Shown: positions 7,600 to 63,182, numbered from the stretch's first letter. The stretch is 64,000 nucleotides of DNA from Schmidtea nova (GCA_044892505.1 CM097883.1:440572001-440636000), one strand, 5' to 3'. The notes: generated from the letters alone by a model not told the origin. Translations and numbers: made by a program.

Positions 7600-7687
<88 letters not shown>

Positions 7688-38300: not shown

Positions 38301-41300
38301 CTTTGTCCATTGCAACTCGAGATGAAAAAGCTTGGGCTCCCTCGTATCTCAAAAAACTCACACGTAAGGGCACTCGTATGTCGAGGTACCACAATACAGT
38401 GGTTCCAGTCCTTTCTAAAGTCACGCCACACTTAATAATCGTAATTTTCCCATTACTTTAATATTTATATTTTTTTTAAATATCCAATTTTTATCAGTTA
38501 ACTAGTACAACAATATGCGATGACTGAATAATACAAATAAACTACAATATCAACAGAATGTAATTCCAGCATTTAGCATGGCTTCACAACTCAATTAACT
38601 GTATATAATAAATTCCCTTTGCATACCCAATGGTCAACTTATCATTTATGACAGAGGTTCCCAAACTGTGGGTCGCGACCCAAAAGTGGGTCGCCAATCT
38701 CTGGCAAGTGGGTCGCGAAAGTTTTTAGGAAAACATAACTTTTTTCGTCTTTTATTTCAGTAACACGCAAATTTCATACTTTATTCCGGTATAACTAGCG
38801 GAACAACAACATTTGACTATGATTGGGCCATAACTAGCTTCTACTTGTTAGTGTATATGAACAGTAAATAGTGCACGAACTTTGCAAGGCAGGATTATAA
38901 AAAACATCTGCTATTAAATATGAACCAAATATTAAATAGTTGAACCAGCATCATTGTCCGTCTCTGACTCTGAGCTATGACCACTCACACATGAGAAAGA
39001 TTTGCGTTTTCGTTTCAAAAATTTATCCATATTTATTTTTCTTTAAACTTGACAGTATAAATATTAGTTAAACTGTTATAACACTGTTAAAACTGTTGCT
39101 TTTGCATTGAAATAAATTTTTTACTGTTTTCCTAAGTTTCAATTTTATGTTTTAAATGTACTAATTTCTAAAGTTTCTAAACGCTGTCTGTAAATCGGAA
39201 TATTTTAACCCAATTTATGAGATATTACTGAGTACTCGATGCATAATTTTATTCAGTGGGTCCCGAGATGTCAAAAATATTTCCAAGTGGGTCCAGAGCC
39301 AAAGAAGTTTGGGAACCTCTGATTTATGTAACCACAATTAATCACAAATTAGAAGGTGAAGCATCCAATTATCAGCTTTTAATACTTCATTTATTGAGCT
39401 TGGTTTTATTTCATTTTTATCTCATTGCATCCTTGCAAATCACTCAATTTTCTTTCATTAGCAAAATATTCAGCGTTTTTCTCTAACAAATTTAGAGTTC
39501 TTTTAGAAATCTAAAATTCCATGTATTTTCCCAGTTTACCTTGCTACTCTGGAAACTTCTTTCCTTGATCATAATACAGCAATAAATATCAATTATTTTG
39601 ATCAAGGATTATTTAAACCAGGAATGAGCAAACTGCCCGTCAATGATTTGGACGCAAGTCCATTTTTGTTTATTATGATTGTTATGTTCTGATGTCCGAA
39701 ACAACACAATAATTATGAGAGTTAAGGCTGAACTATCACATTACAAATACATGACAGCTTTGTTTTAAAAAGTGTTTTTAAAAAGTATGTAACTCTACTC
39801 TACAAGAAAATCGGGTGTTTTTAATAAAGTTTTCCCTACGGTTTCTTATTAGTGATGGTTCGATATGACAGTATAGATAATTTATAACCAATATCACCTG
39901 GTCAGATAGTAGAGGATTAATCTAAGGAAAGATAATAAATGAGTTTTAAATGTTTATAAAAGTGATTAAATCAACCTCTCTATTTAGGAAGGGCTTTGAA
40001 ATATATAAAGAGGGGGAAGAGTAACGAACACCAATAAAATAAATAAAAGATTTAACATTTCAAAATCAAACCTGGGAGAAGCGCCTCTAATATCAAGCAC
40101 GGAACGGGGTACAGCATATATAATTAATGCTATCAATGTAAAATACGTGTCAATACGGTGAGTTGTGCTGATGCGGCCCACTTTGCATAGATCAGATACC
40201 AATGCAGCCCACCCCTGATCTACACTATACAAACATACGCTATAATTATTTTACAATTAAAGGTGAAATATCAATTTGTGATTTGCTATAAACCTCATGT
40301 ACAATTGTATTTGAAAATAGTTTCTTCCACTTTCCTTTAAATAATTAATTTTCATATGAATTGTAATAAATTTGGACTTCGAAACCAGATTTTCTTCATT
40401 ATTGTAGCTATAATTATCTGTTTAATTAAAAGATATGATATTCATTATATTCTACTTTTTAAGGCGTTAATGGATGATGGAGAAAAGGGTCACAGCCATA
40501 ATGGACATAATAAAATGGTTTGGAAATCGTTAGTCGCGTTAATTGGAATTCATCTATTCTTCCTTACTGAAAGAATCACAATTCTTTATCAAAATCTGAG
40601 ATCTAAAAGAAAGTCCAAAAAGCAACACGTAAAATTTTCTCATTTTAATATACATTTTTGTGTGCAAAATATTTTACCAAAGCACTCAATTTAGTTTATT
40701 TTCATTTTTTTCAAACAATAGATCAAAATAATTTTTAAACAGTTAATATTACCGTTACTTTTTCAAATGCTTATTTTAAACACTTGAAAAAGGCAGTGTC
40801 GAAATATTGTGTTAAATAGGAGAATAAATCCTTTATCATAATCCGTGTCACTTGTTATATACGGAAACAATAGAAATGTAATAGTTATGGTTTAATGGGT
40901 TAATTAAATAATCTCAATATATTCTTTGCTGATTGTAGGGGATTGTGATTTAAACGCTAAAAACTCGCACAAAATTCTTTATCAATTATTATTAAAGTTC
41001 TTATAATTTTTTTAAAATCTGTTGTCCATTTACACATTTTCCTATGCTAACCAATATTACTCACACCTTTCAATCAGCTTTGTTATTAAACCCGGAGGTA
41101 AGAACAAGTCTCTCCAATGTTTATAAATTGCACCAATTACATGAAAAATTATACACTAAATCAGAATTATAACCTATTTGAGATTGAGATTTATTCCTAA
41201 ACATTACTAATACTTGTAAAGATTTCGAAACTATTTGAAATATATTAGAATTACCGAAACATTTCATCACAGAAAACTTAAAATTTTAAAACCTTTCGAA

Positions 41301-43048: not shown

Positions 43049-43079
<31 letters not shown>

Positions 43080-46000
43080 TTATTATTATTAATATCAATA
43101 ATTCCCATAATGGGTGACTATAGATTAAAATTTCTGTAAATAAGTACACAATATTTCGGCACAGCATTTATCAAGTGTAATACACACTTGATAAAGGCGG
43201 TGCCGAAATATTGTGTACTTATTTAAAGAAATCTTGATCTATAGTCATCCATTATGGGAATTATTGATATCAATAATAAAAAAAGGTCAAAACTGAAATA
43301 AAAAGANNNNNNNNNNNNNNNNNNNNNNNNNNNNNNNNNNNNNNNNNNNNNNNNNNNNNNNNNNNNNNNNNNNNNNNNNNNNNNNNNNNNNNNNNNNNNN
43401 NNNNNNNNNNNNNNNNNNNNNNNNNNNNNNNNNNNNNNNNNNNNNNNNNNNNNNNNNNNNNNNNNNNNNNNNNNNNNNNNNNNNNNNNNNNNNNNNNNNN
43501 NNNNNNNNNNNNNNNNNNTTGTAGACTGCTTTATTTACAAATCAATAATAACTCTTGTAACTATTGGATTAATTCATTCCAACTCTTATAAATGTCGTAT
43601 TAATTTGTACTTCTACGATTTAAACAGATGTTGATTATAAATTAAATCTGAAATTTGTCAAATAATTTTAGGCAAATATTGGTGCTCATTTGTGTAATCG
43701 CCCGAAAAGCAAGCCCCACGTCAATAGCGACTGTCCAGACTCAATGAATTGTAAGTTTAATATTTTAATCCATTTATTGCATTGATCTGCATGTCGCAAC
43801 TATTTTTTATCAGTCTGATTTTTCGTTTTACTATTTATCAATCATGTTCTTAATTATTTATTGACTTTCCTATCGTTTTTTTACTTGTAACATAAAATAT
43901 ATTTATCAAGTAAAATAAATTTGGTAAAATAGGTAAATATTCTAGATTGTGCAAATAAAATGTTGCTAATCATTTTCAAGGATGTGCCATGGTTTCGAAG
44001 GTTTTATAATAAAGCGATTGTCACATAACAAAATCTAACAACATTATTCAACCGTATTCCGAATCCTAATATTTGCAAATACTTTATCTATACTATTAAA
44101 CATTAGACATTGTTAGAGATATTTAATTAACTAATTTATAAATAACATATTGTATTATAAGTAATCAATTTTATTATATAGTCAAATTATAATAAGTATA
44201 AATGCTGGCACGCATAATTGTCGTTATTATTTAATTCATTAATTCGCCATTTTAAATTTGTTCGAATAAGACAAATTATTACGGAAGCAGTTTTTATTTG
44301 AATATAATTTAACAACAACAAATCTTTAATTATTAACAGACATATTAAAAACGCAAGATTTCCAAAGCTCTATACAATAAAATGTACATTAACGTTTTGA
44401 CCAAAATTAAAATTTTTAAGCAAATAACAAAATTGTTTTATATTTTTTACATTAAATAATTACACTTTTTATTTACCTACGAGAACACAATCAATGAATT
44501 CTGAATGTAAAATGCCGACTGCTTGCATTGCCAACTCGAATGTTATACAAATCACATAAATTTAAACTAATTTTGTTGGATGTATATGTCAGTGGTTCTC
44601 AGCCATTTTAAGATTACGACATCCTTATATTAATTATGATAAATTCATATTTTTATCATTTCAGATTTAAAAAAAAACAATCAATGACGCAGAATTGTTC
44701 TTTTAAAATTACTCCGTATAGCCAGCTCAATGTTAACTATAAATAATGAAGAAAACAAAGGAATAAATAAATTTGTTGAGTTTTTTGTTGAGTTCGTAGT
44801 ACCCCGGTTGAGAACCACTGGTATATATTATTAAAATAATTGATTTATTATTTACTATTTTTATAATCAACAATTTTTGTCGATCCATTTTCAGGCTTNN
44901 NNNNNNNNNNNNNNNNNNNNNNNNNNNNNNNNNNNNNNNNNNNNNNNNNNNNNNNNNNNNNNNNNNNNNNNNNNNNNNNNNNNNNNNNNNNNNNNNNNNN
45001 NNNNNNNNNNNNNNNNNNNNNNNNNNNNNNNNNNNNNNNNNNNNNNNNNNNNNNNNNNNNNNNNNNNNNNNNNNNNNNNNNNNNNNNNNTAGCAGCATTA
45101 AGTATTAAATTAATTAATAAATAAGTAACAAAATAAGCCTTTGCTGCAAAAATAATTTTATTAAATGAGAAAATTATTTTTCCAGCNNNNNNNNNNNNNN
45201 NNNNNNNNNNNNNNNNNNNNNNNNNNNNNNNNNNNNNNNNNNNNNNNNNNNNNNNNNNNNNNNNNNNNNNNNNNNNNNNNNNNNNNNNNNNNNNNNNNNN
45301 NNNNNNNNNNNNNNNNNNNNNNNNNNNNNNNNNNNNNNNNNNNNNNNNNNNNNNNNNNNNNNNNNNNNNNNNNNNNNNNNNNNNNNNNNNNNNNNNNNNN
45401 NNNNNNNNNNNNNNNNNNNNNNNNNNNNNNNNNNNNNNNNNNNNNNNNNNNNNNNNNNNNNTTTGATCTTTTTTTATTATTATTATCAATAATTCTCATA
45501 ATGACTATAGATCAAAATTTTTTTTTATAAACAATAACACAATATTTCGGCACAGCCTTTATCAAGTGTGTATTTCTATCGTTATATTTACTTAATCCTA
45601 AATAGTAGCCTTAATTATTTTTTTAATATTTTATAATGATTTTATTGGATGAAAAAATTTATTTTAATTTTTTTGTGCGAATTGAATGTTGATGGACGGT
45701 TTGTATTTTTTTATGAAAAAAGTCTCGGAAGCTAATCTTTGTAATGAATTTTTGAATCCCTCTTGTAGGATCTGGCATTTTGTTTCTTCTATAGATGGAG
45801 TTGTTTTATGTACTTTTTCCCAGTGTTCGTAATAATTACTGGTTTTGATTTTAGTATGTTCATTAAGTCGGGTGCGAAAAGTTCTATGTGTTTCTCCTAT
45901 GTAAGTAGCGTCACATTTTTGAAAAGAAAGTTTATATACTATATTTTTGGAAAAGCAAAAGCATCGGGTTGTGGAACGGCAAAGACATTTATGTTTGGAG

Positions 46001-49000
46001 ATGTTGGAAATTGGTGGCTTTCGGAGTTGTGATTTTAACGGTGCGGAGGTTATGAATGTTGGACGGATGTGGATAGGCAAATCTGTTTGATTAAAAATGT
46101 TGGTGATTTTGTTGGCTGTAGTGTCATTTAGGAAAGGTAATCTTAGATATGTTGTGTGTTTGTTATTGTTATTGTGTTTCTGGCGTTTTCTATTGTTGCG
46201 TTTATTGTGGTATGGTTCGTTAAGGAAGTGTTTCTTTACAAATTTTGATCTATAGTCATTATGAGAATTATTGATAATAATAATAATTATTATTATTAAT
46301 ACTACTATTATTACTACTATTATTATACTACTCAAAAGTATAACCGTCAAAAATGGCAGACATTTGTTTAAATGTCAATTAAAATCCTGAATTCCGTGAT
46401 GCATTTAACTCCCAAAGACAATATTTATATATAACACACAGTCCATACGAAAAATGTTTTTTACTTTGAGATCGGAGCACAATCTATAAATTGAATTTTT
46501 TTAAATCAGATTATTTTTAATTCAATATTATTTAATATAATACATTATTATTATGATGATGANNNNNNNNNNNNNNNNNNNNNNNNNNNNNNNNNNNNNN
46601 NNNNNNNNNNNNNNNNNNNNNNNNNNNNNNNNNNNNNNNNNNNNNNNNNNNNNNNNNNNNNNNNNNNNNNNNNNNNNNNNNNNNNNNNNNNNNNNNNNNN
46701 NNNNNNNNNNNNNNNNNNNNNNNNNNNNNNNNNNNNNNNNNNNNNNNNNNNNNNNNNNNNNNNNNNNNNNNNNNNNNNNNNNNNNNNNNNNNNNNNNNNN
46801 NNNNNNNNNNNNNNNNNNNNNNNNNNNNNNNNNNNNNNNNNNNNNNNNNNNNNNNNNNNNNNNNNNNNNNNNNNNNNNNNNNNNNNNNNNNNNNNNNNNN
46901 NNNNNNNNNNNNNNNNNNNNNNNNNNNNNNNNNNNNNNNNNNNNNNNNNNNNNNNNNNNNNNNNNNNNNNNNNNNNNNNNNNNNNNNNNNNNNNNNNNNN
47001 NNNNNNNNNNNNNNNNNNNNNNNNNNNNNNNNNNNNNNNNNNNNNNNNNNNNNNNNNNNNNNNNNNNNNNNNNNNNNNNNNNNNNNNNNNNNNNNNNNNN
47101 NNNNNNNNNNNNNNNNNNNNNNNNNNNNNNNNNNNNNNNNNNNNNNNNNNNNNNNNNNNNNNNNNNNNNNNNNNNNNNNNNNNNNNNNNNNNNNNNNNNN
47201 NNNNNNNNNNNNNNNNNNNNNNNNNNNNNNNNNNNNNNNNNNNNNNNNNNNNNNNNNNNNNNNNNNNNNNNNNNNNNNNNNNNNNNNNNNNNNNNNNNNN
47301 NNNNNNNNNNNNNNNNNNNNNNNNNNNNNNNNNNNNNNNNNNNNNNNNNNNNNNNNNNNNNNNNNNNNNNNNNNNNNNNNNNNNNNNNNNNNNNNNNNNN
47401 NNNNNNNNNNNNNNNNNNNNNNNTATTTATTATTTTTAATTAAAATTTTTTATTGATACATAATTGACAAACGAATTCTAGATGAGTTGTGTAACACAAT
47501 TAATCCTTATTCAATGAATCCAGAAACAAATGGATGTAATGCAATCAATTCTGACATACGAGTGCAAACCAACGGGGAAATCAAAACAGTTCAGCCAATC
47601 GAGGAAAGCAAACCGAGCTACTTATTAACTGATCGGCAGTTAGCAAATATTAACAATATCAACAGTTCGTGCGCCCAGAATGAAACTAGCAATTGGTCAA
47701 ATAAAGAAGACCACAAACTACTTTCACCACAAATTCCCGCAGAATCCAATATTAATAATGTTGAGGTTATTTACTAATTATTTTCTACAATATAATAATA
47801 ATCTTTAGTATTAACTAGATTATTTTTTACCATAATTCGTATTTATTTGTATGTAAAAACCTCTATGCTCATATATTCCCAAGCTCTTTTTGATATATTT
47901 CATCCAATTGAACTTGACTCTTTTAATATATTTTTTTCTTTTCTATGTTTACCACAAATCAATATTCCGAAAAGCTTTTTTCGCTGCCTACCTAAAGGTA
48001 AACCTTGCTAGTTTGGCCCAAGTTAGCTTTTGAGTTTGACACCCTTGGTGTAGGAGATAGATCAACAAAACTGTTTAAAATTCTGATCTTGCTATTTTGT
48101 ACAAAAACAAGAAAAATAAAGATTTTTAATACTTTATCAAATAAAAATTAACTATTGTTTTTACGATTTTTTATCTATGATTTTACGCTATGGATCAATA
48201 TTTTTAATTGTTTTACACAGATTTTCTTTTTTTTGTGATCTTTATTTAGACATAAACCATCTGGATATTTGGTAAAGCCAGGAGAACCGGAGTAGCGTAG
48301 AATTTTTACATTCGCGATTTGGTAAAAATGTAAATTGGCTAACCTATTCTTTATTCAATAACATTCTCATAGTTTCCCGATATTCGTCAGGCGAAAAGTT
48401 GCAATTGTTGTTATTATTTATAACATGATCCTCGTAAAAGCAACAAAAGACTACGCAGTTGTATCCATCTTTTTGTTGTAGGAAACTGTCTTTCGTAATT
48501 GTAAAATCACTTCCAACTCGTATGAGCTCAGTTAATTTTTTTACTTCTGCTAATTGATTTTGACCTTGTGGATCATATTGCAATATTTCAGAGGTTGCTA
48601 TGTTGACCTGAAATGCAATCTGGAAGTTTTGAACATTTTTAAATGGGGTGTAAAAATTCTACCCCGTAAAAGAGATGCTTATATGGGCGGAAATTTCAAC
48701 TGTACATGTGTTAGGACCGTTAAACCATACATCTAAAAGCATTCGGTCCGTCATGCTCTATATCACGTCATATCAAAAAAAGAAAAATTTTCACCAACCC
48801 AAAGTTGAGGTTAACAATCTCTAAAACACCATGGCAAACCAGATATTTTGTCTAAAAACTTGCTACCTTGCTATATACATTTTGTACTTTTTTAATCAAA
48901 CACAAATGTTCAAAATATGACAACGATGTTTGTTATAATCTAAATTGTATACAAGTATTTTCTCACAAAAAACAGCTACCAAATCGCCAATGTAAAAATT

Positions 49001-52000
49001 CTACAGCGTAGTAAAAATTCTACGCTACACCGGTTTTATTATTTTGGATAGGAAAAATATGTTGGTTTTATTTCCATCTATTATTGTCAGTATCATTGCT
49101 CATTCAGCTGAAGATTGATTTGCAAAGTTTAAAGGCCAAACATGAAATTTTGGTACACCTCATAAAATCTTTCCAAGGACCCCCCAAATTTAAAGACCTT
49201 CCTTATATCCCCTAAAATATATTTGACTTCTCCCAACCTTTTTTAAATTTCTTGATTTTTCGCTGATTTCCTTAATGGATTTACAAGATTTGTAGATTGT
49301 TCGATTCGGAATTACTTATCCTACAAGTTGACATAAAAAAAGTTGACATCTTTAAAACATTTTTATTTTTATTTTTATTTTCACCTTCAACTTTTTCTAT
49401 TCGAAATAATCAAGTCGACAATTTAAGCATGTTAGATGTTTTAGAAAGTATTTTATTAAAATTCAATAAGTAGTAAATTTATTAATAAAAACCTGAATTG
49501 TGTGAATTAATTAGATTAATGCCTGTCAACAGCGGAAAAGATGAGGTAATGGTGAAAACTGTACCAAATAATAAATTGTTTTGATTGTTTATCATGACAG
49601 ATGGAAGAATTATAGATACGGAATGTTAGAAAGTCAGATGGAAGTTACAAATAGACGANNNNNNNNNNNNNNNNNNNNNNNNNNNNNNNNNNNNNNNNNN
49701 NNNNNNNNNNNNNNNNNNNNNNNNNNNNNNNNNNNNNNNNNNNNNNNNNNNNNNNNNNNNNNNNNNNNNNNNNNNNNNNNNNNNNNNNNNNNNNNNNNNN
49801 NNNNNNNNNAAAACTAACTAAATCAACTAGGTTCACTAAGTCAAAAAACATAGTTTTTAGTAAATCGATATTTAAGAAGTTTGTGTATCTGAAGGTAGTA
49901 TTCGGTTTTTTGACAATGTAACTATTATTAAATTCAGTTGTATTTTTGCCTTTGGAAAATTATATAATAAGTGTACATGCTAAATTTATCGAATAATAGT
50001 TTAAATATAGCGATTATTACGAAAAGCTTTTCCTTTTTACTCTTTTTCCTTTTTTTCTTTTCATTATTCCTTTTACTATTTTACTTTTTCCTTCTTTTGT
50101 ATTTTGTATTTGATTATTTGAATATACAAGTTAAATTTATTGACTAATAGTTATATTAAATTTTTATTTAATTTTTTTTGAATATTTTTGTAACATTTTG
50201 ATGCTAACTTTTAGAGTACATGTTTCAGAATCAAACTAAATCCAGCAAGCGAAACAGTGGAAAATTAAAAAAAATTACAGGGGTCAATTTATTTAGGGAG
50301 GTTTACCAAAAATTTCACTCACTCACTCACTCACACACACACACATATATATATATAAAAAGGATGTATTAGAAACTTCTAATAAATTTTTTTTTGAGAA
50401 GGATTGAGATTTCTTTGCAATAATTTAAAAATTTATGATGGTACTTTGTATAAAATGGATCAGCCAAGATCTTTGATGCAAGGCCTCTAGGTTCCAGCTA
50501 CTTAACTTTACTCTTTGCAATTGATTTTTGCGTCCGTGTAGACTTAAATGTTTTCATGGAGCAAATAAAGTTCTAATTTTCAGCTTTTGTCTTAATTTAC
50601 TGATCATATTGTTATAGGAATTTAAGTTTATTATGCACTCAATGAAATCTGTCTTCAAAATATTTTTGAAATTCTAGACCGTCCTCAACATTACACATTC
50701 ATGATTTGAAATCCCTCAATGGAATTCTTTCAAGACATCTTTAAAATTTATACAAATATATAACATAAATTCTAANNNNNNNNNNNNNNNNNNNNNNNNN
50801 NNNNNNNNNNNNNNNNNNNNNNNNNNNNNNNNNNNNNNNNNNNNNNNNNNNNNNNNNNNNNNNNNNNNNNNNNNNNNNNNNNNNNNNNNNNNNNNNNNNN
50901 NNNNNNNCCTTTGATCTTTTTTTATTATTATTATCAATAATTCTCATAATGACTATAGATCAAATTTTTTTTATAAACAATAACACAATATTTCGGCACA
51001 GCCTTTATCAAGTGTGTATTTCAATATATATATATATATATATATACGTTTATATGTATTATTTGTCTCATTATTTTTGTAATACAAAGAATAAAATAGT
51101 TTTTCTTTTCGTTTAATTATACAAATTTAGTGGAAACGTTTTGGGGTTCCGCAACAAAATAAGTTTGAGATCGCTGCATTAAATTAATTATTCCTTAATT
51201 ATTTTCTTTCTCTAGGTAAAATATCAAATTTCTTAAGTTTTGTTAATCGTCTATTTGTAACTTCCATCTGACTTTCTAACATTCCGTATCTATAATTCTT
51301 CCATCTGTCATGATAAACAATCAAAACAACAATTTATTATTTGGTACAGTTTTCACCATTACCTCATCTTTTCCGCTGTTGACAGGCATTAATCTAATTA
51401 ATTCACACAATTCAGGTTTTTATTAATAAATTTACTACTTATTGAATTTTAATAAGTCAATTTTTGAGTTTTTGTTGAGGGCTTCATTTATCCAGCACAA
51501 TAGCTATTGAGTATGACTTTTTACCGAGAATTTACCGTGCAGATGAAGTATGGCTGTTCTTATGATACGGTAGATTGTATTGGTAACTGTAAATCACGAT
51601 TTTCTTTTCATTATTATTTATTGTACCAATTTGGAATATTTCCCATTGAAATTTATTCTCCATAAACTAGGTGAAAACTGTTAGTACAAAACATTCTGAC
51701 CACATAGAACGATTAGAAATTGGAGCCGGTGGAGCGACAGTTAAATCGAGTTTAGCCCATCCGTTTAAAAACAAACCTCACGGTCATCATCATGGGCATA
51801 GTCATGATTTGAGTAGTGTTAAAGCGATCGCATACACAGTCATTGCCGGAGACGGACTTCATAATTTCTGTGACGGAATAGCAATCGGAGCGGCATTTGC
51901 AAATGACATTGGAGGTGGCTTATCAACTGCTATAGCGGTCCTCTGTCATGAATTACCCCACGAACTTGGTAATAATTTAGTCCTCCTATCGGTCAAATGT

Positions 52001-55660: not shown

Positions 55661-56245
55661 CAAATAAATGGCTATTGGCTTTATGCAAGATTACGGACAA
55701 ATTCTGTTTTTTATTTATTTTTATTTCCTTGCATTATCCATGATAACCTTTTACTAGTATTCTAGTCATTTCTAAAATTATATTTTTATCAATGTATTAT
55801 TTTTATCTGATCAAGTAAACTATTATTTTTCTTATAATAAGCAAAATATGAAACCAGGAAATTTCTCATGATTAGGCTCTTGTTTTGAATTCAATTAGTA
55901 ATGTGAGATCATTTGCATATCCTCAATCAGGTCATTTTCATGATAACTAAGGAAATTTNNNNNNNNNNNNNNNNNNNNNNNNNNNNNNNNNNNNNNNNNN
56001 NNNNNNNNNNNNNNNNNNNNNNNNNNNNNNNNNNNNNNNNNNNNNNNNNNNNNNNNNNNNNNNNNNNNNNNNNNNNNNNNNNNNNNNNNNNNNNNNNNNN
56101 NNNNNNNNNNNNNNNNNNNNNNNNNNNNNNNNNNNNNNNNNNNNNNNNNNNNNNNNNNNNNNNNNNNNNNNNNNNNNNNNNNNNNNNNNNNNNNNNNNNN
56201 NNNNNNNNNTCATAATGACTATAGATCAAAATTTTTTTTATAAAC

Positions 56246-56287
56246 AATAACACAATATTTCGGCACAGCCTTTATCAAGTGTGTATT
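56246..56287 (-). ncRNA. Hammerhead-like motif in the 3' pseudo-LTR (U3-A8)
   Basis: Exact reverse complement of 61583-61624. Confidence 0.7.
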
Positions 56288-56376
56288 TCTATCGTTATAT
56301 TTACTTAATCCTAAATAGTAGCCTTAATTATTTTTTTAATATTTTATAATGATTTTATTGGATGAAAAAATTTATT

Positions 56377-58974
56377 TTAATTTTTTTGTGCGAATTGAAT
56401 GTTGATGGACGGTTTGTATTTTTTTATGAAAAAATTCTCGGAAGCTAATCTTTGTAATGAATTTTTGAATCCCTCTTGTAGGATCTGGCATTTTGTTTCT
56501 TCTATAGATGGAGTTGTTTTATGTACTTTTTCCCAGTGTTCGTAATAATTACTGGTTTTGATTTTAGTATGTTCATTAAGTCGGGTGCGAAAAGTTCTAT
56601 GTGTTTCTCCTATGTAAGTAGCGTCACATTTTTGACAAGAAAGTTTATATACTATATTTTTGGAAAAGCAAAAGCATCGGGTTGTGGAACGACAAAGACA
56701 TTTATGTTTGGAGATGTTGGAAATTGGTGGCTTTCGGAGTTGTGATTTTAACGGTGCGGAGGTTATGAACGTTGGACGGATGTGGATAGGCAAATCTGTT
56801 TGATTAAAAATGTTGGTGATTTTGTTGGCTGTAGTGTCATTTAGGAAAGGTAATCTTAGATATGTTGTGTGTTTGTTATTGTTATTGTGTTTCTGGCGTT
56901 TTCTATTGTTGCGTTTATTGTGGTATGGTTCGTTGAGAAAGTGTTTCTTTACAAAGTCTTCAGGGTATCCATTTTGGAGGAATCGTATTTTGAAGTTTTC
57001 TAATGTTTCTTGTATTTTGTTTGCGTCTGAACAGTTTCTTATGGCTCTTTTTCTTTCTCCTATTAGTAATGCGATTTTGCGTTGAAGTGGAACGTGGCTT
57101 TTCCATGGGAGGATATGACCGCTATGTAAACCTTTAGAATATAGCTCGGTGTTTGCATTTAGTGTATCTTGGCCTTTTGTGAAACTTACCATGGTATCTA
57201 AAAACGGTATTTTACCTTCTGTGTTCGGTGTTTCAAAAGTGAATTGTATGTTGGTGTTAGTAGAATTTGCGTGTGATAGGATTTGATTGAGAGGGATTGT
57301 GGAGACTATGAAGATGTCGTCGATGTATCGTTTCCAGAAAAGTATTTTTTCCCCAAAAAAAGATATGATCTTAGATTCTATAAAGTTCATGTAGAAGATG
57401 GCTAAGATGGGAGAAAGGTTATTACCCATGGCTAATCCATGAATTTGTTTGAATGGTTTTTCTTTTATTATGACAGTATCTGAATTTATTGCTAATTTTA
57501 GAAGTTCTATAAAGTCTTGTTTAGTTAAGTCTGCGAGGTCTGTATTGGTTTTATGAGTTTCAAAGAAAGAAGCTGCGATATCGAAAATGTTATTCTCTCC
57601 GTGAAGAGGAATAGATCCGTAAAGATTGGAAACGTCAAGAGATCCCCAGAAGTACTGTTGTCCTGAGTTTAACGGAAGAGACGTATTTGTAATTTCGGAG
57701 ACGAATTCAGTTGTGTTTTTAAGATGAGAAGGAACCAAAGGCAAAAGTGTTTTTAGAATTTCTGAAAGAACTTTAGAAAGTGTTGTGGAAGGAGTGTCAA
57801 CTGCAGATACAAGAGGTCTGCCTTTTAAAGGACTTTTGTGATCTTTAGGTAACATAGTCATATTACTAGGTAAAGGCTCACTGCAGTTGCATTTTAAAAG
57901 TAAATCTTTGATTTGAAGGTTAATTTGTTTATTTGCAAGTGTTGAAAGTTTCTTATTGTATAAAATCTGAGTCGATGCAGGTAAGATTATTTTGTTTATC
58001 GGTTCATAGTTCGAGAGATGTTCTTCAAATAGAGTATTGTATTGTTCTGTGTCAAGAGCAATTAGTCGATTTGTTTTATCTGATGGAAGAATTGTGAAGT
58101 CTTTGGAATTCTTAATTTTCTTTATGTTTGAAGTGAAAGAATTTTGTGTTGAGCAATGTTTTTCAAGAAAGATAATTTGTTCTCTGACTAAAGTTTTGAC
58201 TTTAGTTTCTAAACAGCTGATTTTTTCTTCAAGTTCAGTCGAAAAGACAGGCATATTTGGATATGTTCTACGATTTGGATCCAGAAGATGATTGTGCTTT
58301 TCAGCTAAACTTGAAGATTTGGTGGATGAAATTGGTTTTAGATGGTATCCTATTTGTCTTCTTAGGCTTATAAGAGAGGCGTTAGTGATGATTTCGGCTT
58401 TTTCTAAATCTTTCTGGTTAGGTGGAGGAACAAAAGATGGTCCTAGAGCGAGGATGTTTTCTTGTGTTTTTGAAAAAATGTGATTAGATTTGTTTGTAAA
58501 TGGAAGAATTGAATTTGAGTGTGAGTTAGTGTCTTTAGTGTTGTTTGAATTTGTTGAAAGTAGCTTTTCTAATTTTTTATGCTTGCGAATGTCGAGATTT
58601 TTGGAGAAATTCTGGCAACAAGTATTATCTTCACAAGTAAGAGGAGCACAAGGAAAACTAGTAAATTCGTTTAGCTTTTTGTAACAAGCTGAAATGCTAA
58701 GCTTAAGCCATTCTTTTTCCTGTTTTTCCTTAAGCTTCAATGCTTGTAAAGATGGATAGGTTGATTCCAGTTTGTTGGTAACAGTCAGGCCCACGGGAAT
58801 GATGTTTCTTCTTTTGCATTCTTTTAAAAAATGTAAGTGTGATTTGATTTTGATGATTTTGAGACTATAAAATAACGATAGATCTACTCGGTGATGGGCG
58901 TCCGCCAATATACTATCATAATTATCTTTTTTCACCTTTGATCTTTTTTTATTATTATTATCAATAATTCTCAT
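56377..58974 (-). CDS. PLE reverse transcriptase + GIY-YIG endonuclease, intact 865 aa
   Basis: LALGPSF, ILPSDKTN, LPKDHK..GRPLVS, SLDVSNLYGSIP, GLAMGNNLSPILA, WKRYIDDIF, IPFLD, NGYP, CLC..CFC linker, NIVYKLSCQKCDATYIGETHR..RLNEH..H..E..I..KPSIN. Confidence 0.95.
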   Translation of the reverse strand: MRIIDNNNKKRSKVKKDNYDSILADAHHRVDLSLFYSLKIIKIKSHLHFLKECKRRNIIPVGLTVTNKLESTYPSLQALKLKEKQEKEWLKLSISACYKKLNEFTSFPCAPLTCEDNTCCQNFSKNLDIRKHKKLEKLLSTNSNNTKDTNSHSNSILPFTNKSNHIFSKTQENILALGPSFVPPPNQKDLEKAEIITNASLISLRRQIGYHLKPISSTKSSSLAEKHNHLLDPNRRTYPNMPVFSTELEEKISCLETKVKTLVREQIIFLEKHCSTQNSFTSNIKKIKNSKDFTILPSDKTNRLIALDTEQYNTLFEEHLSNYEPINKIILPASTQILYNKKLSTLANKQINLQIKDLLLKCNCSEPLPSNMTMLPKDHKSPLKGRPLVSAVDTPSTTLSKVLSEILKTLLPLVPSHLKNTTEFVSEITNTSLPLNSGQQYFWGSLDVSNLYGSIPLHGENNIFDIAASFFETHKTNTDLADLTKQDFIELLKLAINSDTVIIKEKPFKQIHGLAMGNNLSPILAIFYMNFIESKIISFFGEKILFWKRYIDDIFIVSTIPLNQILSHANSTNTNIQFTFETPNTEGKIPFLDTMVSFTKGQDTLNANTELYSKGLHSGHILPWKSHVPLQRKIALLIGERKRAIRNCSDANKIQETLENFKIRFLQNGYPEDFVKKHFLNEPYHNKRNNRKRQKHNNNNKHTTYLRLPFLNDTTANKITNIFNQTDLPIHIRPTFITSAPLKSQLRKPPISNISKHKCLCRSTTRCFCFSKNIVYKLSCQKCDATYIGETHRTFRTRLNEHTKIKTSNYYEHWEKVHKTTPSIEETKCQILQEGFKNSLQRLASENFFIKKYKPSINIQFAQKN

Positions 58975-59006
58975 AATGACTATAGATCAAAATTTTTTTT
59001 ATAAAC

Positions 59007-59048
59007 AATAACACAATATTTCGGCACAGCCTTTATCAAGTGTGTATT
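59007..59048 (-). ncRNA. Hammerhead-like motif in the 5' pseudo-LTR (U3-A8)
   Basis: Exact reverse complement of 61583-61624; the partner copy is at 56246-56287. Confidence 0.7.
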
Positions 59049-59129
59049 TCTATCGTTATATTTACTTAATCCTAAATAGTAGCCTTAATTATTTTTTTAA
59101 TATTTTATTTTTTTAATATTTTACAAGCA

Positions 59130-61493
59130 TTGAAGCTTAAGGAAAAACAGGAAAAAGAATGGCTTAAGCTTAGCATTTCAGCTTGTTACAAAAAGCTAAA
59201 CGAATTTACTAGTTTTCCTTGTGCTCCTCTTACTTGTGAAGATAATACTTGTTGCCAGAATTTCTCCAAAAATCTCGACATTCGCAAGCATAAAAAATTA
59301 GAAAAGCTACTTTCAACAAATTCAAACAACACTAAAGACACTAACTCACACTCAAATTCAATTCTTCCATTTACAAACAAATCTAATCACATTTTTTCAA
59401 AAACACAAGAAAACATCCTCGCTCTAGGACCATCTTTTGTTCCTCCACCTAACCAGAAAGATTTAGAAAAAGCCGAAATCATCACTAACGCCTCTCTTAT
59501 AAGCCTAAGAAGACAAATAGGATACCATCTAAAACCAATTTCATCCACCAAATCTTCAAGTTTAGCTGAAAAGCACAATCATCTTCTGGATCCAAATCGT
59601 AGAACATATCCAAATATGCCTGTCTTTTCGACTGAACTTGAAGAAAAAATCAGCTGTTTAGAAACTAAAGTCAAAACTTTAGTCAGAGAACAAATTATCT
59701 TTCTTGAAAAACATTGCTCAACACAAAATTCTTTCACTTCAAACATAAAGAAAATTAAGAATTCCAAAGACTTCACAATTCTTCCATCAGATAAAACAAA
59801 TCGACTAATTGCTCTTGACACAGAACAATACAATACTCTATTTGAAGAACATCTCTCGAACTATGAACCGATAAACAAAATAATCTTACCTGCATCGACT
59901 CAGATTTTATACAATAAGAAACTTTCAACACTTGCAAATAAACAAATTAACCTTCAAATCAAAGATTTACTTTTAAAATGCAACTGCAGTGAGCCTTTAC
60001 CTAGTAATATGACTATGTTACCTAAAGATCACAAAAGTCCTTTAAAAGGCAGACCTCTTGTATCTGCAGTTGACACTCCTTCCACAACACTTTCTAAAGT
60101 TCTTTCAGAAATTCTAAAAACACTTTTGCCTTTGGTTCCTTCTCATCTTAAAAACACAACTGAATTCGTCTCCGAAATTACAAATACGTCTCTTCCGTTA
60201 AACTCAGGACAACAGTACTTCTGGGGATCTCTTGACGTTTCCAATCTTTACGGATCTATTCCTCTTCACGGAGAGAATAACATTTTCGATATCGCAGCTT
60301 CTTTCTTTGAAACTCATAAAACCAATACAGACCTCGCAGACTTAACTAAACAAGACTTTATAGAACTTCTAAAATTAGCAATAAATTCAGATACTGTCAT
60401 AATAAAAGAAAAACCATTCAAACAAATTCATGGATTAGCCATGGGTAATAACCTTTCTCCCATCTTAGCCATCTTCTACATGAACTTTATAGAATCTAAG
60501 ATCATATCTTTTTTTGGGGAAAAAATACTTTTCTGGAAACGATACATCGACGACATCTTCATAGTCTCCACAATCCCTCTCAATCAAATCCTATCACACG
60601 CAAATTCTACTAACACCAACATACAATTCACTTTTGAAACACCGAACACAGAAGGTAAAATACCGTTTTTAGATACCATGGTAAGTTTCACAAAAGGCCA
60701 AGATACACTAAATGCAAACACCGAGCTATATTCTAAAGGTTTACATAGCGGTCATATCCTCCCATGGAAAAGCCACGTTCCACTTCAACGCAAAATCGCA
60801 TTACTAATAGGAGAAAGAAAAAGAGCCATAAGAAACTGTTCAGACGCAAACAAAATACAAGAAACATTAGAAAACTTCAAAATACGATTCCTCCAAAATG
60901 GATACCCTGAAGACTTTGTAAAGAAACACTTTCTCAACGAACCATACCACAATAAACGCAACAATAGAAAACGCCAGAAACACAATAACAATAACAAACA
61001 CACAACATATCTAAGATTACCTTTCCTAAATGACACTACAGCCAACAAAATCACCAACATTTTTAATCAAACAGATTTGCCTATCCACATCCGTCCAACG
61101 TTCATAACCTCCGCACCGTTAAAATCACAACTCCGAAAGCCACCAATTTCCAACATCTCCAAACATAAATGTCTTTGTCGTTCCACAACCCGATGCTTTT
61201 GCTTTTCCAAAAATATAGTATATAAACTTTCTTGTCAAAAATGTGACGCTACTTACATAGGAGAAACACATAGAACTTTTCGCACCCGACTTAATGAACA
61301 TACTAAAATCAAAACCAGTAATTATTACGAACACTGGGAAAAAGTACATAAAACAACTCCATCTATAGAAGAAACAAAATGCCAGATCCTACAAGAGGGA
61401 TTCAAAAATTCATTACAAAGATTAGCTTCCGAGAATTTTTTCATAAAAAAATACAAACCGTCCATCAACATTCAATTCGCACAAAAAAATTAA
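59130..61493 (+). CDS. 5'-truncated second copy of the PLE ORF (787 codons, no ATG at the junction)
   Basis: The translation is identical to residues ~79-865 of the minus-strand ORF. The listed start is a TTG just inside the inversion junction. Confidence 0.85.
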   Translation: MKLKEKQEKEWLKLSISACYKKLNEFTSFPCAPLTCEDNTCCQNFSKNLDIRKHKKLEKLLSTNSNNTKDTNSHSNSILPFTNKSNHIFSKTQENILALGPSFVPPPNQKDLEKAEIITNASLISLRRQIGYHLKPISSTKSSSLAEKHNHLLDPNRRTYPNMPVFSTELEEKISCLETKVKTLVREQIIFLEKHCSTQNSFTSNIKKIKNSKDFTILPSDKTNRLIALDTEQYNTLFEEHLSNYEPINKIILPASTQILYNKKLSTLANKQINLQIKDLLLKCNCSEPLPSNMTMLPKDHKSPLKGRPLVSAVDTPSTTLSKVLSEILKTLLPLVPSHLKNTTEFVSEITNTSLPLNSGQQYFWGSLDVSNLYGSIPLHGENNIFDIAASFFETHKTNTDLADLTKQDFIELLKLAINSDTVIIKEKPFKQIHGLAMGNNLSPILAIFYMNFIESKIISFFGEKILFWKRYIDDIFIVSTIPLNQILSHANSTNTNIQFTFETPNTEGKIPFLDTMVSFTKGQDTLNANTELYSKGLHSGHILPWKSHVPLQRKIALLIGERKRAIRNCSDANKIQETLENFKIRFLQNGYPEDFVKKHFLNEPYHNKRNNRKRQKHNNNNKHTTYLRLPFLNDTTANKITNIFNQTDLPIHIRPTFITSAPLKSQLRKPPISNISKHKCLCRSTTRCFCFSKNIVYKLSCQKCDATYIGETHRTFRTRLNEHTKIKTSNYYEHWEKVHKTTPSIEETKCQILQEGFKNSLQRLASENFFIKKYKPSINIQFAQKN

Positions 61494-61582
61494 AATAAAT
61501 TTTTTCATCCAATAAAATCATTATAAAATATTAAAAAAATAATTAAGGCTACTATTTAGGATTAAGTAAATATAACGATAGA

Positions 61583-61624
61583 AATACACACTTGATAAAG
61601 GCTGTGCCGAAATATTGTGTTATT
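61583..61624 (+). ncRNA. Minimal type I hammerhead-ribozyme-like motif, U3-A8 variant
   Basis: AAUA(C)ACAC-UUGAUAA-A-GGC/UGU/GCC-GAAA-UA-U-U-GUGUUAUU. It has an 8-bp stem I with a bulge, a 3-bp stem II and a palindromic AUAU stem III, and sits in a PLE pseudo-LTR where such ribozymes are known to occur. Confidence 0.7.
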
Positions 61625-61716
61625 GTTTATAAAAAAAATTTTGATCTATAGTCATTATGAGAATTATTGATAATAATAATAAAAAAAGATCAAAGGTGAA
61701 AAAAGATAATTATGAT

Positions 61717-61721
61717 ATTAT

Positions 61722-61804
<83 letters not shown>
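61717..61804. repeat. (ATT)n microsatellite at the PLE 3' junction
   Basis: About 25 ATT units directly after ...gataattatgat. Confidence 0.95.
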
Positions 61805-61806
<2 letters not shown>

Positions 61807-62047
61807 AATGAAGATGTGATTTTTCCACAAATAATTGTCTAAATAAGTGCTATAAGTGTCATTTTTACAACAATTTGAACAAAGTTGGGTAATTAAAGTG
61901 TTATACTAACTGAAAATAATTTTATGTGTCATAAGAGAAAACAGATAAATTACATCAAAATTTAACCTTATTATAATAAATTCTGCAGTAATCTTCTGTT
62001 AACCAAGATCATCGAGTAAAAGTCATTTATTTTGAAATTAATAAATA

Positions 62048-63182
62048 CGTGGTGCGGTCAAAAAGTTTCCGGCCTACCCCAGAAAAAAGTAAAAGCAAGA
62101 AACCACAACTATATTTTTATCAACACCAATACCATTACTTCTCGAACCAATTACCTCCGGCATCGACACACTTCTGCCAATGACCAGGGAGGGCTTCGAA
62201 TGCCCCATGGTAAAATGAGGGTGGAAGCTGGACAAAAATTCGATTTACAGCCTCCTCTAAATCGCCTGCATCCATGAAATACTGTCCCCGCTGTTGCTTC
62301 TTCAATTCCGTAAATAGGCAGTAATCTGAGGGAGCCAAATCATGGCTGTATGGAGGGTGGCTAATGATCTCGAAGCCACAGTCATTGAGTTTTGCTTGGG
62401 CAATGTGGCTGGTGTGAACTGGCACATTGTCATGTTGAAACCAGTGAGGGAGACCATATGGTTTTCGGTACTTTCTACGAGCTTGCGGCTTTCTCCATTC
62501 CATAGACTCCCGCTTTGATTCAGCCTGATGTAGGGGCAACGGTGTCTCGTCAACAGTGAGGATGTTTTGGGTAAATCTTTCTCCATACTTGCGGTAAATG
62601 GCGATGTTCATGAGACACGCATTCTTTCGGTTATTGCACATCTTAGTTGTCAAAAAGCGAGGCACAAAGCGAGACACTACCTTGTTGAAGTTAAGGTCAT
62701 TCAATAATTGCACTACGGTGCCGTGTGATATTTGTAAGGATTCTTCCAGCTGCCTGGTAGTTATACGGCGATCTTCCAGTACCATTTTCTCCAATTTTTC
62801 CTTCATTTCTCGAAGTCGTTGGTCGACCCTCTCGTTCCTCATCTGACACACTTTGCCGACCCCGTTTGAATTCAGCAATCCCAAACTTGATGGTAGACTG
62901 AGAGGGACACTTTTCGCCATAGGCTCAATTCAGATTTGCCATGATTTCCTGGTTGGTTTGGCCGAGAAGAACACAAAAGCGAATAGCACTGCGATACTCA
63001 ATTTTTTTCCAGCGAATGCACTTGCAACGACATTTCCATCTGCAACAGATAAAGTAAATGGATTAGGTCAATAAGATTTTCAACATGAAATTGTCAATAA
63101 ATTTCCAATAAAATAAACCTATTTCCATTAAAAAATCAATTTGTTAAGTAGGGTAGGCCGGAAACTTTTTGACCGCACCACG
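62048..63182 (-). mobile_element. mariner (DD34D) transposon, defective
   Basis: Perfect 32-bp TIRs cgtggtgcggtcaaaaagtttccggcctaccc and a TA TSD. The transposase has RFVPRFLT, TVDET and HDN-34 aa-D (HPPYSHDLAPSDYCLF). The N-terminus is frameshifted and the segment between the first two Asp residues is deleted. Confidence 0.95.

What the first reader, a model, noticed from the sequence alone, without database searches (positions are those of the whole stretch)
61583..61624. Cryptic minimal hammerhead ribozyme with a U3-A8 core in the pseudo-LTR of a young Penelope-like element
Seen: the pseudo-LTR folds by eye as stem I (AAUA-c-ACAC / GUGUUAUU), core UUGAUAA, one extra A, stem II GGC-UGU-GCC, GAAA, palindromic AUAU, then U17. 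Known: the hammerhead core CUGANGA contains a C3-G8 Watson-Crick pair, and PLE pseudo-LTRs often carry minimal type I hammerheads thought to act as dimers through a palindromic stem III. Inference: both partners are changed here (U3-A8), so a CUGANGA pattern search would miss it, and stem III is unusually short (4-nt palindrome). Cleavage is predicted 3' of 61616. At least 7 complete copies occur in 64 kb (21714, 43179, 45533, 50979, 56246, 59007, 61583).
Basis: partly seen in the sequence, partly recalled or inferred. Interest (0 to 1): 0.88.

Follow-up and report, generated by a model that had tools for sequence, protein, structure and literature searches.

The report
Known-type hammerhead variant in a retrotransposon
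The 42-base motif is a real minimal hammerhead ribozyme motif with a swapped core base pair (U3-A8), sitting in the terminal repeat of a young Penelope-like retrotransposon; this variant was already described in such elements in 2014, so it is a new example rather than a new kind.

Summary
The motif at 61583-61624 reads as described, and its 24-nt core pattern occurs 13 times in the window against 0 expected by chance.

It lies in the 199-nt pseudo-LTR of a 2761-nt Penelope-like element (PLE). That element has an intact 865-aa ORF (reverse transcriptase plus C-terminal GIY-YIG) and a 100%-identical inverted, 5'-truncated partner.

PLE relatives from metagenomes (25-53% aa identity) carry the same motif on the ORF strand, just outside the ORF. 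All share the extra A after A9 and an invariant G10.1; all but one have a 4-nt palindrome. Seven relative lineages have C3-G8, four have U3-A8, and none has a mismatch. On an RT tree the 3-8 state needs three changes in 200 of 200 bootstraps. N7, the loops and the stems vary, and the stems vary with compensation.

So this is a selected hammerhead. It is not a new kind:
- Natural U3-A8 hammerheads were reported in 2011.
- About 1,300 U3-A8 minimal hammerheads in Schistosoma PLEs were reported in 2014, with the unpaired nucleotide described for that motif class.
- The very short palindromic helix III is the class norm, not unusual.

Catalysis is untested. No truncated copy starts at the predicted cut (61616/61617). 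Rfam misses this motif and the canonical-core relatives alike.

The parts
61583..61624 (+). The motif of the finding: a minimal type-I hammerhead with a U3-A8 core. U17 is at 61616, so the predicted cut lies between 61616 and 61617.
61523..61721 (+). 199-nt pseudo-LTR at the 3' end of the plus-strand copy. It holds the motif, a long-range hairpin and the first 20 codons of the ORF, and is followed by an (ATT)n run.
59120..61721 (+). Inverted, 5'-truncated copy of the element. It is 100% identical to the minus-strand copy over 2541 nt. Its open frame 59130-61493 lacks the first 75 codons.
56210..59108 (-). Upstream pseudo-LTR plus a full-length unit of the Penelope-like element (unit length 2761 nt). 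Its 3' end runs into the N run 55959-56209, which was not filled.
56377..58974 (-). Intact ORF of 865 aa: reverse transcriptase (aa 383-569, RVT_1) and C-terminal GIY-YIG endonuclease. The ATG lies inside the upstream pseudo-LTR, 40 nt 3' of the predicted cut.
59007..59048 (-). Identical motif copy in the upstream pseudo-LTR of the full-length element. The predicted cut is between 59015 and 59014.
56246..56287 (-). Identical motif copy in the downstream pseudo-LTR. Cutting at this copy and at the 59007-59048 copy would release a 2761-nt unit RNA.
45462..46242 (-). 5'-truncated copy, 99.1% identical, bounded by an N run. It carries a complete motif at 45533-45574.
50908..51022 (-). Short solo copy next to a (TA)n run, bounded by an N run. 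It carries a complete motif at 50979-51020.
21609..22145 (.). Cluster of five short copies in alternating orientation. Complete motifs lie at 21672-21713(-) and 21714-21755(+). Cut or damaged ones lie at 21841(+), 21987-22028(-) and 22023(+).
43080..43302 (.). Head-to-head pair of an older subfamily (83-84% identity). It has a complete motif at 43179-43220(+) with a loop II change. The copy at 43142-43178(-) is 5'-cut and carries a stem II mismatch.
40775..40816 (+). Diverged solo motif in which only about 38 nt are alignable. It keeps U3-A8, changes N7, keeps stem II through a G-U pair, and changes distal stem I on both sides. No PLE coding remnant lies nearby.
20311..21163 (+). Old, 5'-truncated remnant of a related element (75% nt identity). 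Its coding part is broken: 8 stop codons in the frame tried. It ends inside the motif core.
61640..61695 (+). Long-range hairpin of the pseudo-LTR (8-bp stem, 61640-61647 with 61688-61695) enclosing the ORF start. The closest relative, L008, keeps it through a change on both sides.

Best explanation
The motif is a genuine member of the minimal type-I hammerhead class that Penelope-like elements (PLEs) carry in their pseudo-LTRs. It is the covariant form in which the core pair C3-G8 is replaced by U3-A8.

It is transcribed as part of the element's sense RNA. In the full-length minus-strand copy it lies 40 nt upstream of the ORF start.

Inferred mechanism:
1. On a read-through transcript of the partial tandem (pseudo-LTR, ORF, pseudo-LTR), stems I and II form within each motif.
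2. The 4-nt palindrome pairs with that of a second motif to build helix III of a dimer, or the element's own protein stabilises the fold.
3. The RNA is cut 3' of U17. This leaves a 2',3'-cyclic phosphate on U17 and a 5'-OH on the next G (61617, 59014).
4. Cuts in both pseudo-LTRs would release a 2761-nt unit RNA that keeps the whole ORF.

Shown here: homology to canonical-core motifs in related PLEs, strand and position, the conservation pattern, and covariation of 3-8 and of the stems.

Inferred, not shown: that it cleaves, that it does so as a dimer or with protein help, and what cleavage does for the element.

The confidence given is for membership of the class and selection on the hammerhead fold. 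That it actually cleaves in vivo I put at about 0.5.
For: Motif and copies:
- The motif and its 13 copies are present against 0 expected.

PLE identity and tandem/inverted structure:
- RVT_1 and GIY-YIG match, and relatives were found.
- The pseudo-LTR and the inverted partner are present.

The same motif in relatives:
- A descriptor that left positions 3 and 8 free found 14 motifs in 80 kb of related loci.
- All 14 lie on the ORF strand and just outside the ORF. The one other hit, inside a coding region of L018, was set aside as chance. Shuffles give 1.97 hits for both strands together.
- Among these 14, 10 are C-G, 4 are U-A and 0 are mismatched.

Conservation in the 13-row alignment:
- U4, G5, A6, A9, the extra A, G10.1, G12, A13, A14, A15.1 and U16.1 are invariant. 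N7 and the loops vary.
- The 3-8 pair is U-A in 7 rows and C-G in 6.
- Over the stems, 93.7% of cells are paired against 67.9% in shuffles and 28-57% when partners are slid. The covariation score is 0.769 against 0.256.

Phylogeny:
- On the RT tree the U-A lineages fall in three groups. Three state changes are needed in 200 of 200 bootstraps.

Within the window:
- The diverged solo copy at 40775 keeps only the motif.

Literature:
- U3-A8 occurs in natural hammerheads, and ribozymes with covarying nucleotides at these positions were already shown active in vitro (PMC3088659).
- U3-A8 minimal hammerheads occur in Schistosoma PLEs. PLE motifs cut weakly and only as dimers or with an extended helix III (PMC4209133).
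- A PLE hammerhead cut only when the element's protein was present (PMC11167929).
Against: - No cleavage data exist for this sequence.
- The fold is no more stable than shuffled sequence (z = -1.0). The palindrome duplex is worth only about -2.4 kcal/mol.
- No Rfam hammerhead model matches, even at E up to 10.
- None of about ten 5' ends of truncated copies lies at the predicted cut. They fall at positions equal to 61579-61593 or 61604-61607, so inserted copies derive from uncut RNA.
- For another PLE, cleavage was not needed for insertion in vitro, and no RNA-seq ends were seen at the cut site (PMC11167929).
- The pairing of stems I and II in my set is partly built in by the descriptor. The 3-8 pair, the extra A, G10.1 and the palindrome were not built in.
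- Within the young family, identity between copies says nothing about selection.
Confidence: 0.77

Rival explanations
1. Dead relic. An ancestral canonical hammerhead lost activity through changes at C3 and G8. It is merely carried along in a family that amplified recently, as Naiad PLEs thrive without any hammerhead.
For: - Copies of the young family are 98-100% identical, so their conservation is uninformative.
- Truncated copies do not begin at the cut site.
- The fold energy is unremarkable.
Against: - Both partners changed together, and no instance in the 12 lineages (14 in relatives, 3 in the window) shows a half-changed pair.
- U-A appears in three separate RT clades, each keeping every other core position. 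Three changes are needed in 200 of 200 bootstraps.
- The solo copy at 40775 and the relative L008 (53% aa identity) keep the U-A core while N7, the loops and the stems changed with compensation.
- Ribozymes with covarying nucleotides at these positions were reported active in vitro (PMC3088659).
Confidence: 0.1
2. The motif is conserved for a role other than self-cleavage. It could be a binding or folding site for the element's protein, a stop or start signal for reverse transcription, or part of the pseudo-LTR promoter or transcription start region.
For: - The 5' ends of most short copies cluster at the 5' edge of stem I, at positions equal to 61579-61593.
- The hammerhead of another PLE acted only with the element's protein present, and cleavage was dispensable for insertion in vitro (PMC11167929).
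Against: - The conserved and variable positions coincide one for one with the hammerhead catalytic core as given in PMC7151607. U4, G5, A6, A9, G12-A14, A15.1-U16.1 and a paired 3-8 are conserved; N7 is free.
- A mere protein or promoter site would not be expected to reproduce that pattern.
- The two roles are not exclusive.
Confidence: 0.12
3. Chance resemblance in AT-rich repeat DNA.
For: - A relaxed descriptor gives about 2.5 hits per shuffled window.
- Unrelated hits do occur, for example at 53912(-) and 54685(+).
Against: - The same architecture occurs at the same place and on the same strand in 11 independent related lineages, with an invariant core.
- The exact pattern occurs 13 times against 0 expected.
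Confidence: 0.01

Closest known systems
Minimal hammerheads (min-HHR) of metazoan Penelope-like elements, including the U3-A8 variant of Schistosoma mansoni Cercyon elements (Cervera and de la Pena 2014, PMC4209133)
   Same: - It lies in the pseudo-LTR on the ORF strand.
- It is type I, with a short stem I.
[quoted passage not shown]
- Helix III is reduced to a small palindrome.
- It occurs as tandem pairs about one unit apart, as close opposite-strand pairs, and mostly as solo motifs.
- It has U3-A8 in place of C3-G8.
   Different: - Stem II here is only 3 bp (2-6 bp in the relatives), against 7-8 bp in the Schistosoma families.
- The host genome is much more AT-rich.
- The PLE family is a different one; the closest protein found is 45-53% identical.
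- The copies here are nearly identical, whereas the Schistosoma motifs are highly heterogeneous.
- I could not compare sequences with Cercyon directly.
Natural U3-A8 hammerheads found by comparative analysis (Perreault et al. 2011, PMC3088659)
   Same: Positions 3 and 8 covary to U-A with the rest of the core unchanged. [quoted passage not shown]
   Different: That paper presents these examples as hammerheads found by comparative analysis across all domains of life, not as retrotransposon pseudo-LTR motifs. The motif here has no stable helix III and no recognisable loop-loop contacts.
Hammerhead of the Poseidon element PAc of Anolis carolinensis (PMC11167929)
   Same: - It is a PLE pseudo-LTR hammerhead near the ORF start.
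- The importance of the 3-8 pair was shown by single and double exchanges.
- Activity depended on the element's protein.
- Insertions derive from uncut RNA.
   Different: - PAc has the canonical C3-G8.
- Its ORF starts inside the motif and its cut site is 26 nt downstream of the start codon.
- Here the cut would lie 40 nt upstream of the start codon, so a cut RNA would keep the whole ORF.
Hammerheads with an extra nucleotide between A9 and G10.1 (De la Pena and Flores 2001, as cited in PMC4209133)
   Same: There is one unpaired nucleotide between A9 and the first pair of stem II. In all 14 instances here it is an A.
   Different: PMC4209133 cites these as canonical hammerheads rather than minimal PLE motifs. 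I recall them as viroid ribozymes with full helices, but that paper was not read here.

Membership tests
Hammerhead ribozyme (core as given in PMC7151607) | Core nucleotides U4 G5 A6 N7 A9 on the 5' side | tested here: met
   These positions are 61593-61596 and 61598. They are invariant in 13 aligned instances, while N7 takes all four bases.
Hammerhead ribozyme (core as given in PMC7151607) | Positions 3 and 8 form a Watson-Crick pair (normally C-G) | tested here: met
   The pair is U-A at 61592 and 61597. In the alignment, 7 rows are U-A, 6 are C-G and 0 are unpaired. The descriptor left both positions free. The U-A form is a published natural variant (PMC3088659, PMC4209133).
Hammerhead ribozyme (core as given in PMC7151607) | G12 A13 A14, the A15.1-U16.1 pair, and a cleavage-site nucleotide 17 that is not G | tested here: met
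   G12-A14 are at 61609-61611, A15.1 at 61612, U16.1 at 61615 and U17 at 61616. All are invariant in the relatives, and position 17 is U or C. GAAA, the final U of helix III and a non-G at position 17 were required by the descriptor.
Hammerhead ribozyme (core as given in PMC7151607) | Three helices around the core | tested here: inconclusive
   The proximal 4 bp of stem I and stem II are supported by changes on both sides; the descriptor required part of this pairing. The distal half of stem I is not kept in relatives. Helix III exists only as a 4-nt palindrome that would need a second copy. That duplex is worth about -2.4 kcal/mol.
Hammerhead ribozyme (core as given in PMC7151607) | Site-specific self-cleavage 3' of position 17 | not testable with these tools
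   No RNA data are available. As indirect evidence, no truncated genomic copy starts at 61617.
Hammerhead ribozyme (Rfam covariance models) | A match to an Rfam hammerhead model | tested here: not met
   There is no hammerhead hit at gathering score or at E up to 10. The canonical-core motifs of the relatives are missed as well. The models do not cover this minimal class, so the failure says little.
PLE minimal hammerhead (min-HHR, PMC4209133) | Located in the pseudo-LTR of a Penelope-like element, on the ORF strand | tested here: met
   The motif lies within the 199-nt repeat 61523-61721 = 58910-59108, on the same strand as the ORF. The same holds for all 14 motifs in relatives.
PLE minimal hammerhead (min-HHR, PMC4209133) | [quoted passage not shown] | tested here: met
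   The extra A is at 61599 and the palindrome at 61612-61615. Of the 14 instances (13 aligned rows plus L020), all have the extra A and 13 have a 4-nt palindrome.
Penelope-like element, C-terminal endonuclease type | One ORF with a reverse transcriptase followed by a GIY-YIG endonuclease | tested here: met
   RVT_1 scores 32.4 bits against a cut-off of 29.6. GIY-YIG scores 28.9 bits against 22.6 when the C-terminus is scanned alone. The ORF is 40% identical to P0013, which carries both domains. No solved structure is related by sequence.
Penelope-like element, C-terminal endonuclease type | Partial tandem forming pseudo-LTRs, an adjacent inverted 5'-truncated copy, heavy 5' truncation, and microsatellite flanks | tested here: met
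   The direct repeat has a spacing of 2761 nt. The inverted arms of 2541 nt are 100% complementary. Truncated and solo copies are present, as are (ATT)n and (TA)n flanks. This is as described in PMC8557442. The clade (Penelope/Poseidon, Neptune, Nematis or Hydra) was not assigned.

The most novel reading that the evidence does not exclude
The C3-G8 to U3-A8 exchange is a recurrent, concerted switch that has happened at least three times within one group of Penelope-like elements, rather than a one-off oddity. A U3-A8 core is also compatible with very recent amplification: this element has an intact ORF and copies 98-100% identical. If so, surveys that searched PLE clades with the canonical core string only (as in PMC8557442 for Naiads) may have under-counted hammerheads. 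AT-rich hosts may also favour the U-A form.
Probability: 0.45. Interest if true: 0.4.

Novelty: new member of a known kind. Interest (0 to 1): 0.3.

Why it matters
It adds a well-documented example of the U3-A8 hammerhead core in a retrotransposon that looks recently active. It also adds comparative evidence from 12 lineages that the 3-8 pair switches between C-G and U-A as a unit.

That is a useful natural confirmation of the tertiary pair seen in hammerhead structures. It is also a practical warning for annotation: Rfam models and fixed-core patterns miss this whole class of minimal hammerheads.

It does not change what is known about hammerheads or Penelope-like elements. It does not answer the open question of what the ribozyme does for the element. 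If anything, the truncated copies here retain the whole motif, which agrees with published evidence that uncut RNA is what gets copied.

Tried and rejected
- Rfam was run on the window at gathering score and on 61300-61900 at E up to 10. There was no hammerhead hit. The same was done on 16 related loci, again with no hammerhead hit, even for canonical cores.
- My first strict scan required stem II of at least 3 bp. It found nothing in L001-L007. Relaxing stem II to 2 bp revealed the motifs.
- L001, L004, L006 and L007 show no motif in the DNA held.
- P0001, the closest full-length protein (45% identity), and P0026 gave no DNA.
- The single-sequence fold energy is not significant. The cofold of two copies gives a trivial domain-swapped dimer and cannot represent the crossed helix III.
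- tblastn for a PLE coding remnant near the solo motif at 40775 found none.
- A sequence search of solved structures with the ORF gave no hit.
- Lunse, Weinberg and Breaker 2017, on PLE hammerhead dimers, is not held in the library. I know it only through a review (PMC6765202).
- One Pfam call failed because a broken remnant had stops.
- The organism was not identified. The tools give no taxon for the relatives.
- PLEs are reported absent from mammals (PMC4209133), and the window is about 26% G+C.
N runs were not filled.

Full report
**1. What is in the sequence**

- a 9-nt 5' strand of stem I;
- a seven-nucleotide core that differs from the hammerhead core only at positions 3 (U for C) and 8 (A for G). 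The core reference is the one written in PMC7151607 and PMC8557442;
- one extra A;
- a 3-bp stem II with a 3-nt loop;
- G12 A13 A14;
- a 4-nt palindrome running from A15.1 to U16.1;
- U17 at 61616;
- an 8-nt 3' strand of stem I.

A 24-nt pattern covering the core through the palindrome occurs 13 times on both strands with up to 3 mismatches. Dinucleotide shuffles give 0.00.

Two complete copies were missed: 21672-21713(-) and a diverged one at 40775-40816(+). Four 5'-cut or damaged copies and three shorter remnants were also missed.

The minimum-energy fold of the 42-mer has the hammerhead topology. Its energy is ordinary for the composition (z = -1.0).

**2. The element around it**

A self-comparison shows a 2541-nt inverted repeat with 100% complementarity (56210-58750 and 59120-61660). 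It also shows a 199-nt repeat (58910-59108 and 61523-61721) and a direct repeat with a spacing of 2761 nt.

On the minus strand the order is pseudo-LTR (59108 to 58910), then a full unit running into the N run 55959-56209. On the plus strand lies an inverted copy that lacks its first 358 nt.

The minus-strand ORF (58974 to 56377, 865 aa) is intact. It matches RVT_1. When its C-terminus is scanned alone it matches GIY-YIG above the curated cut-off. It is 40% identical over 576 residues to P0013, which carries both domains.

Partial tandem, adjacent inverted 5'-truncated copy, many short truncated copies and microsatellite flanks make up the published anatomy of Penelope-like elements (PMC8557442).

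The ORF's ATG lies inside the pseudo-LTR, 40 nt downstream of the predicted cut. Cuts in the upstream and downstream motifs would release exactly one 2761-nt unit that contains the whole ORF.

Dispersed copies are 98-100% identical, so the family is young. The perfect identity of the two long arms next to an assembly gap could owe something to assembly.

An older subfamily (83-89% identity; 43080-43302, 21841, 7486-7609) is also present. So are a 75%-identical broken remnant (20311-21163; 8 stops in the frame tried) and an endonuclease remnant of another family (11928-12284).

**3. Relatives**

A protein search found 27 relatives at 29-45% identity, all unnamed and from metagenome or read-archive assemblies. 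Seven loci were read through their encoding contigs. A further 26 came from a metagenome scan with a protein alignment.

I used a descriptor with the following settings:
- Fixed: U4 G5 A6, A9 and the four bases G12-A15.1.
- Left free: positions 3, 7 and 8.
- Allowed: 0 or 1 extra nucleotide of any kind; a stem II of 2-8 bp; a helix III segment of 2-8 nt ending in U.
- Required: a non-G at position 17 and at least 3 of 4 pairs in stem I.

It found 15 hits in 80 kb of related loci, all on the ORF strand. Shuffles gave a mean of 1.97 for both strands together. One hit, inside a coding region with an unpaired 3-8 and no palindrome, is taken as chance.

The other 14 lie just outside the ORF, in the repeat where the contig shows one. 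They represent 11 lineages:

| 3-8 state | Loci |
|---|---|
| C3-G8 | L002/L003, L005, L009, L010, L012, L020, L028 |
| U3-A8 | L008 (53% aa identity to the window ORF), L013, L015, L018 |

All 14 have an extra A after A9 and a G at 10.1. Thirteen have a 4-nt palindrome; three different palindromes occur. None of these three features was demanded by the descriptor.

**4. Covariation**

In the 13-row alignment (three window lineages and ten relatives; L020 was left out because its 5-nt helix III shifts the register), the invariant columns are exactly the hammerhead core positions plus the extra A and G10.1.

For the named structure:

| Measure | Observed | 500 shuffles | Partners slid |
|---|---|---|---|
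| Cells paired | 93.7% | 67.9% | 28-57% |
| Cells changed on both sides | 39 | 12.6 | 1-9 |
| Covariation score | 0.769 | 0.256 | 0.07-0.17 |

The 3-8 pair is U-A in 7 rows and C-G in 6, with none unpaired.

The pairing of stems I and II is partly guaranteed by how the instances were found. The 3-8 result is not.

On a neighbour-joining tree of the RT ORFs as they stand (419 columns), support out of 200 bootstraps was:
- window with L008: 200;
- L013 with L018: 200;
- L015 with the C-G lineage L020: 196.

The U-A lineages never form one group. Parsimony needs three changes of state in all 200 trees. Exchange of pseudo-LTRs between families would weaken that count and was not tested.

Inside the window, the solo copy at 40775 shares only about 38 nt with the family. 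It keeps the U-A core and changes N7. It keeps stem II through a G-U pair and changes two distal stem I pairs on both sides.

**5. How it most likely works**

The conserved positions are those of the hammerhead active site and the variable ones are those that a hammerhead tolerates. Selection has therefore acted on a hammerhead fold with a paired 3-8.

The likely action is the one proposed for this class: weak self-cleavage 3' of U17 on read-through transcripts. Helix III would be supplied by a second copy through the palindrome, or the fold would be assisted by the element's protein (PMC4209133, PMC6765202, PMC11167929). This step is inferred.

Points against a role of cleavage in defining what gets inserted:
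- The 5' ends of about ten truncated copies lie at positions equal to 61579-61593 or 61604-61607, never at 61617.
- The palindrome duplex is worth only about -2.4 kcal/mol.
- For the Anolis element, cleavage was dispensable for insertion in vitro and no RNA-seq ends mapped to the cut site (PMC11167929).

**6. Comparison with what is known**

- Perreault et al. 2011 state that C3 and G8 covary to U3 and A8 in several natural hammerheads. [quoted passage not shown]
- Cervera and de la Pena 2014 found the U3-A8 covariation in Cercyon elements of Schistosoma mansoni, with about 1,300 hits. [quoted passage not shown] They describe helix III reduced to the conserved core nucleotides or to a small palindrome, and the occurrence as tandem pairs, close opposite-strand pairs and solo motifs (PMC4209133).

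Three things are specific here: a shorter stem II (3 bp), a different and apparently recently active PLE family in a very AT-rich genome, and the evidence for repeated switching of the 3-8 pair.

Rfam finds neither this motif nor the canonical-core motifs of its relatives. The blindness of standard annotation concerns the whole minimal class.

**7. Verdict**

One sub-claim (helix III 'unusually short') is wrong, and the implied novelty is overstated. This is a new member of a known kind. Interest is 0.3.

**8. Limits and rules**

- The organism is not identified, and no RNA data were available.
- N runs were left as they are.
ORFs were used only as single open frames as they stand.

Noticed in passing
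window 61579-61607 equivalents: copies at 21710/21712, 22023/22024, 43178/43179, 51022, 21841, 7486/7490, 35275: The 5' ends of the short solo and head-to-head copies cluster at the 5' edge of the motif, or inside stem II. None lies at the predicted cut site. Either a transcription start in the pseudo-LTR or a reverse-transcription stop at the folded motif would fit.
   Followed up: partly
window 61640-61695 (also 58936-58991 on the minus strand); L008 about 1520-1580: An 8-bp long-range hairpin of the pseudo-LTR encloses the ORF start codon. The closest relative, L008, keeps it through an A-U to G-C change on both sides. It may be a second functional RNA element, for example for recognition by the reverse transcriptase.
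   Followed up: partly
window 53858-54738: A foldback or MITE-like element with inverted arms of about 200 nt (about 90% complementary). Each arm holds a relaxed-descriptor hammerhead-like hit with G3-C8 and a 6-bp stem II (53912-, 54685+). This is within the chance expectation of 2.5 hits per shuffled window.
   Followed up: partly
window 5755-6372 and 9948-10595 (+): Two exons of a NAT10-like RNA cytidine acetyltransferase gene (helicase and GNAT domains). They show that the window is a eukaryotic chromosome with long, repeat-filled introns.
   Followed up: no
window 62135-62920 (-): A 261-aa ORF with weak DDE_3 and Tc3-type HTH matches, both below the Pfam cut-offs. It is probably a Tc1/mariner-like transposase remnant right next to the PLE pair.
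   Followed up: no
window 20311-21163 (+) and 11928-12284 (+): Two older PLE remnants. One is related to the young family (75% nt identity, 8 stops in the frame tried, ending inside the motif core). The other is an endonuclease-only piece of another family (35% aa identity) with no motif downstream.
   Followed up: partly
window N runs at 14315-14590, 34832-35194, 45187-45461, 50776-50907, 55959-56209: Five N runs abut PLE copies directly, so copy ends and part of the downstream pseudo-LTR are hidden. The 100% identity of the 2541-nt inverted arms next to such a run could partly reflect assembly. The runs were not filled.
   Followed up: no
window 61722-61805, 7590-7790, 43018-43102, about 51023-51050: (ATT)n and (TA)n microsatellites directly flank the copies. 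This fits the microsatellite insertion bias reported for PLEs.
   Followed up: no
L001-L007, L008-L028: Rfam release 15 hammerhead models give no hit, even at E up to 10, for any of the ten canonical-core minimal hammerheads in related PLE loci. This class is invisible to standard RNA annotation.
   Followed up: yes
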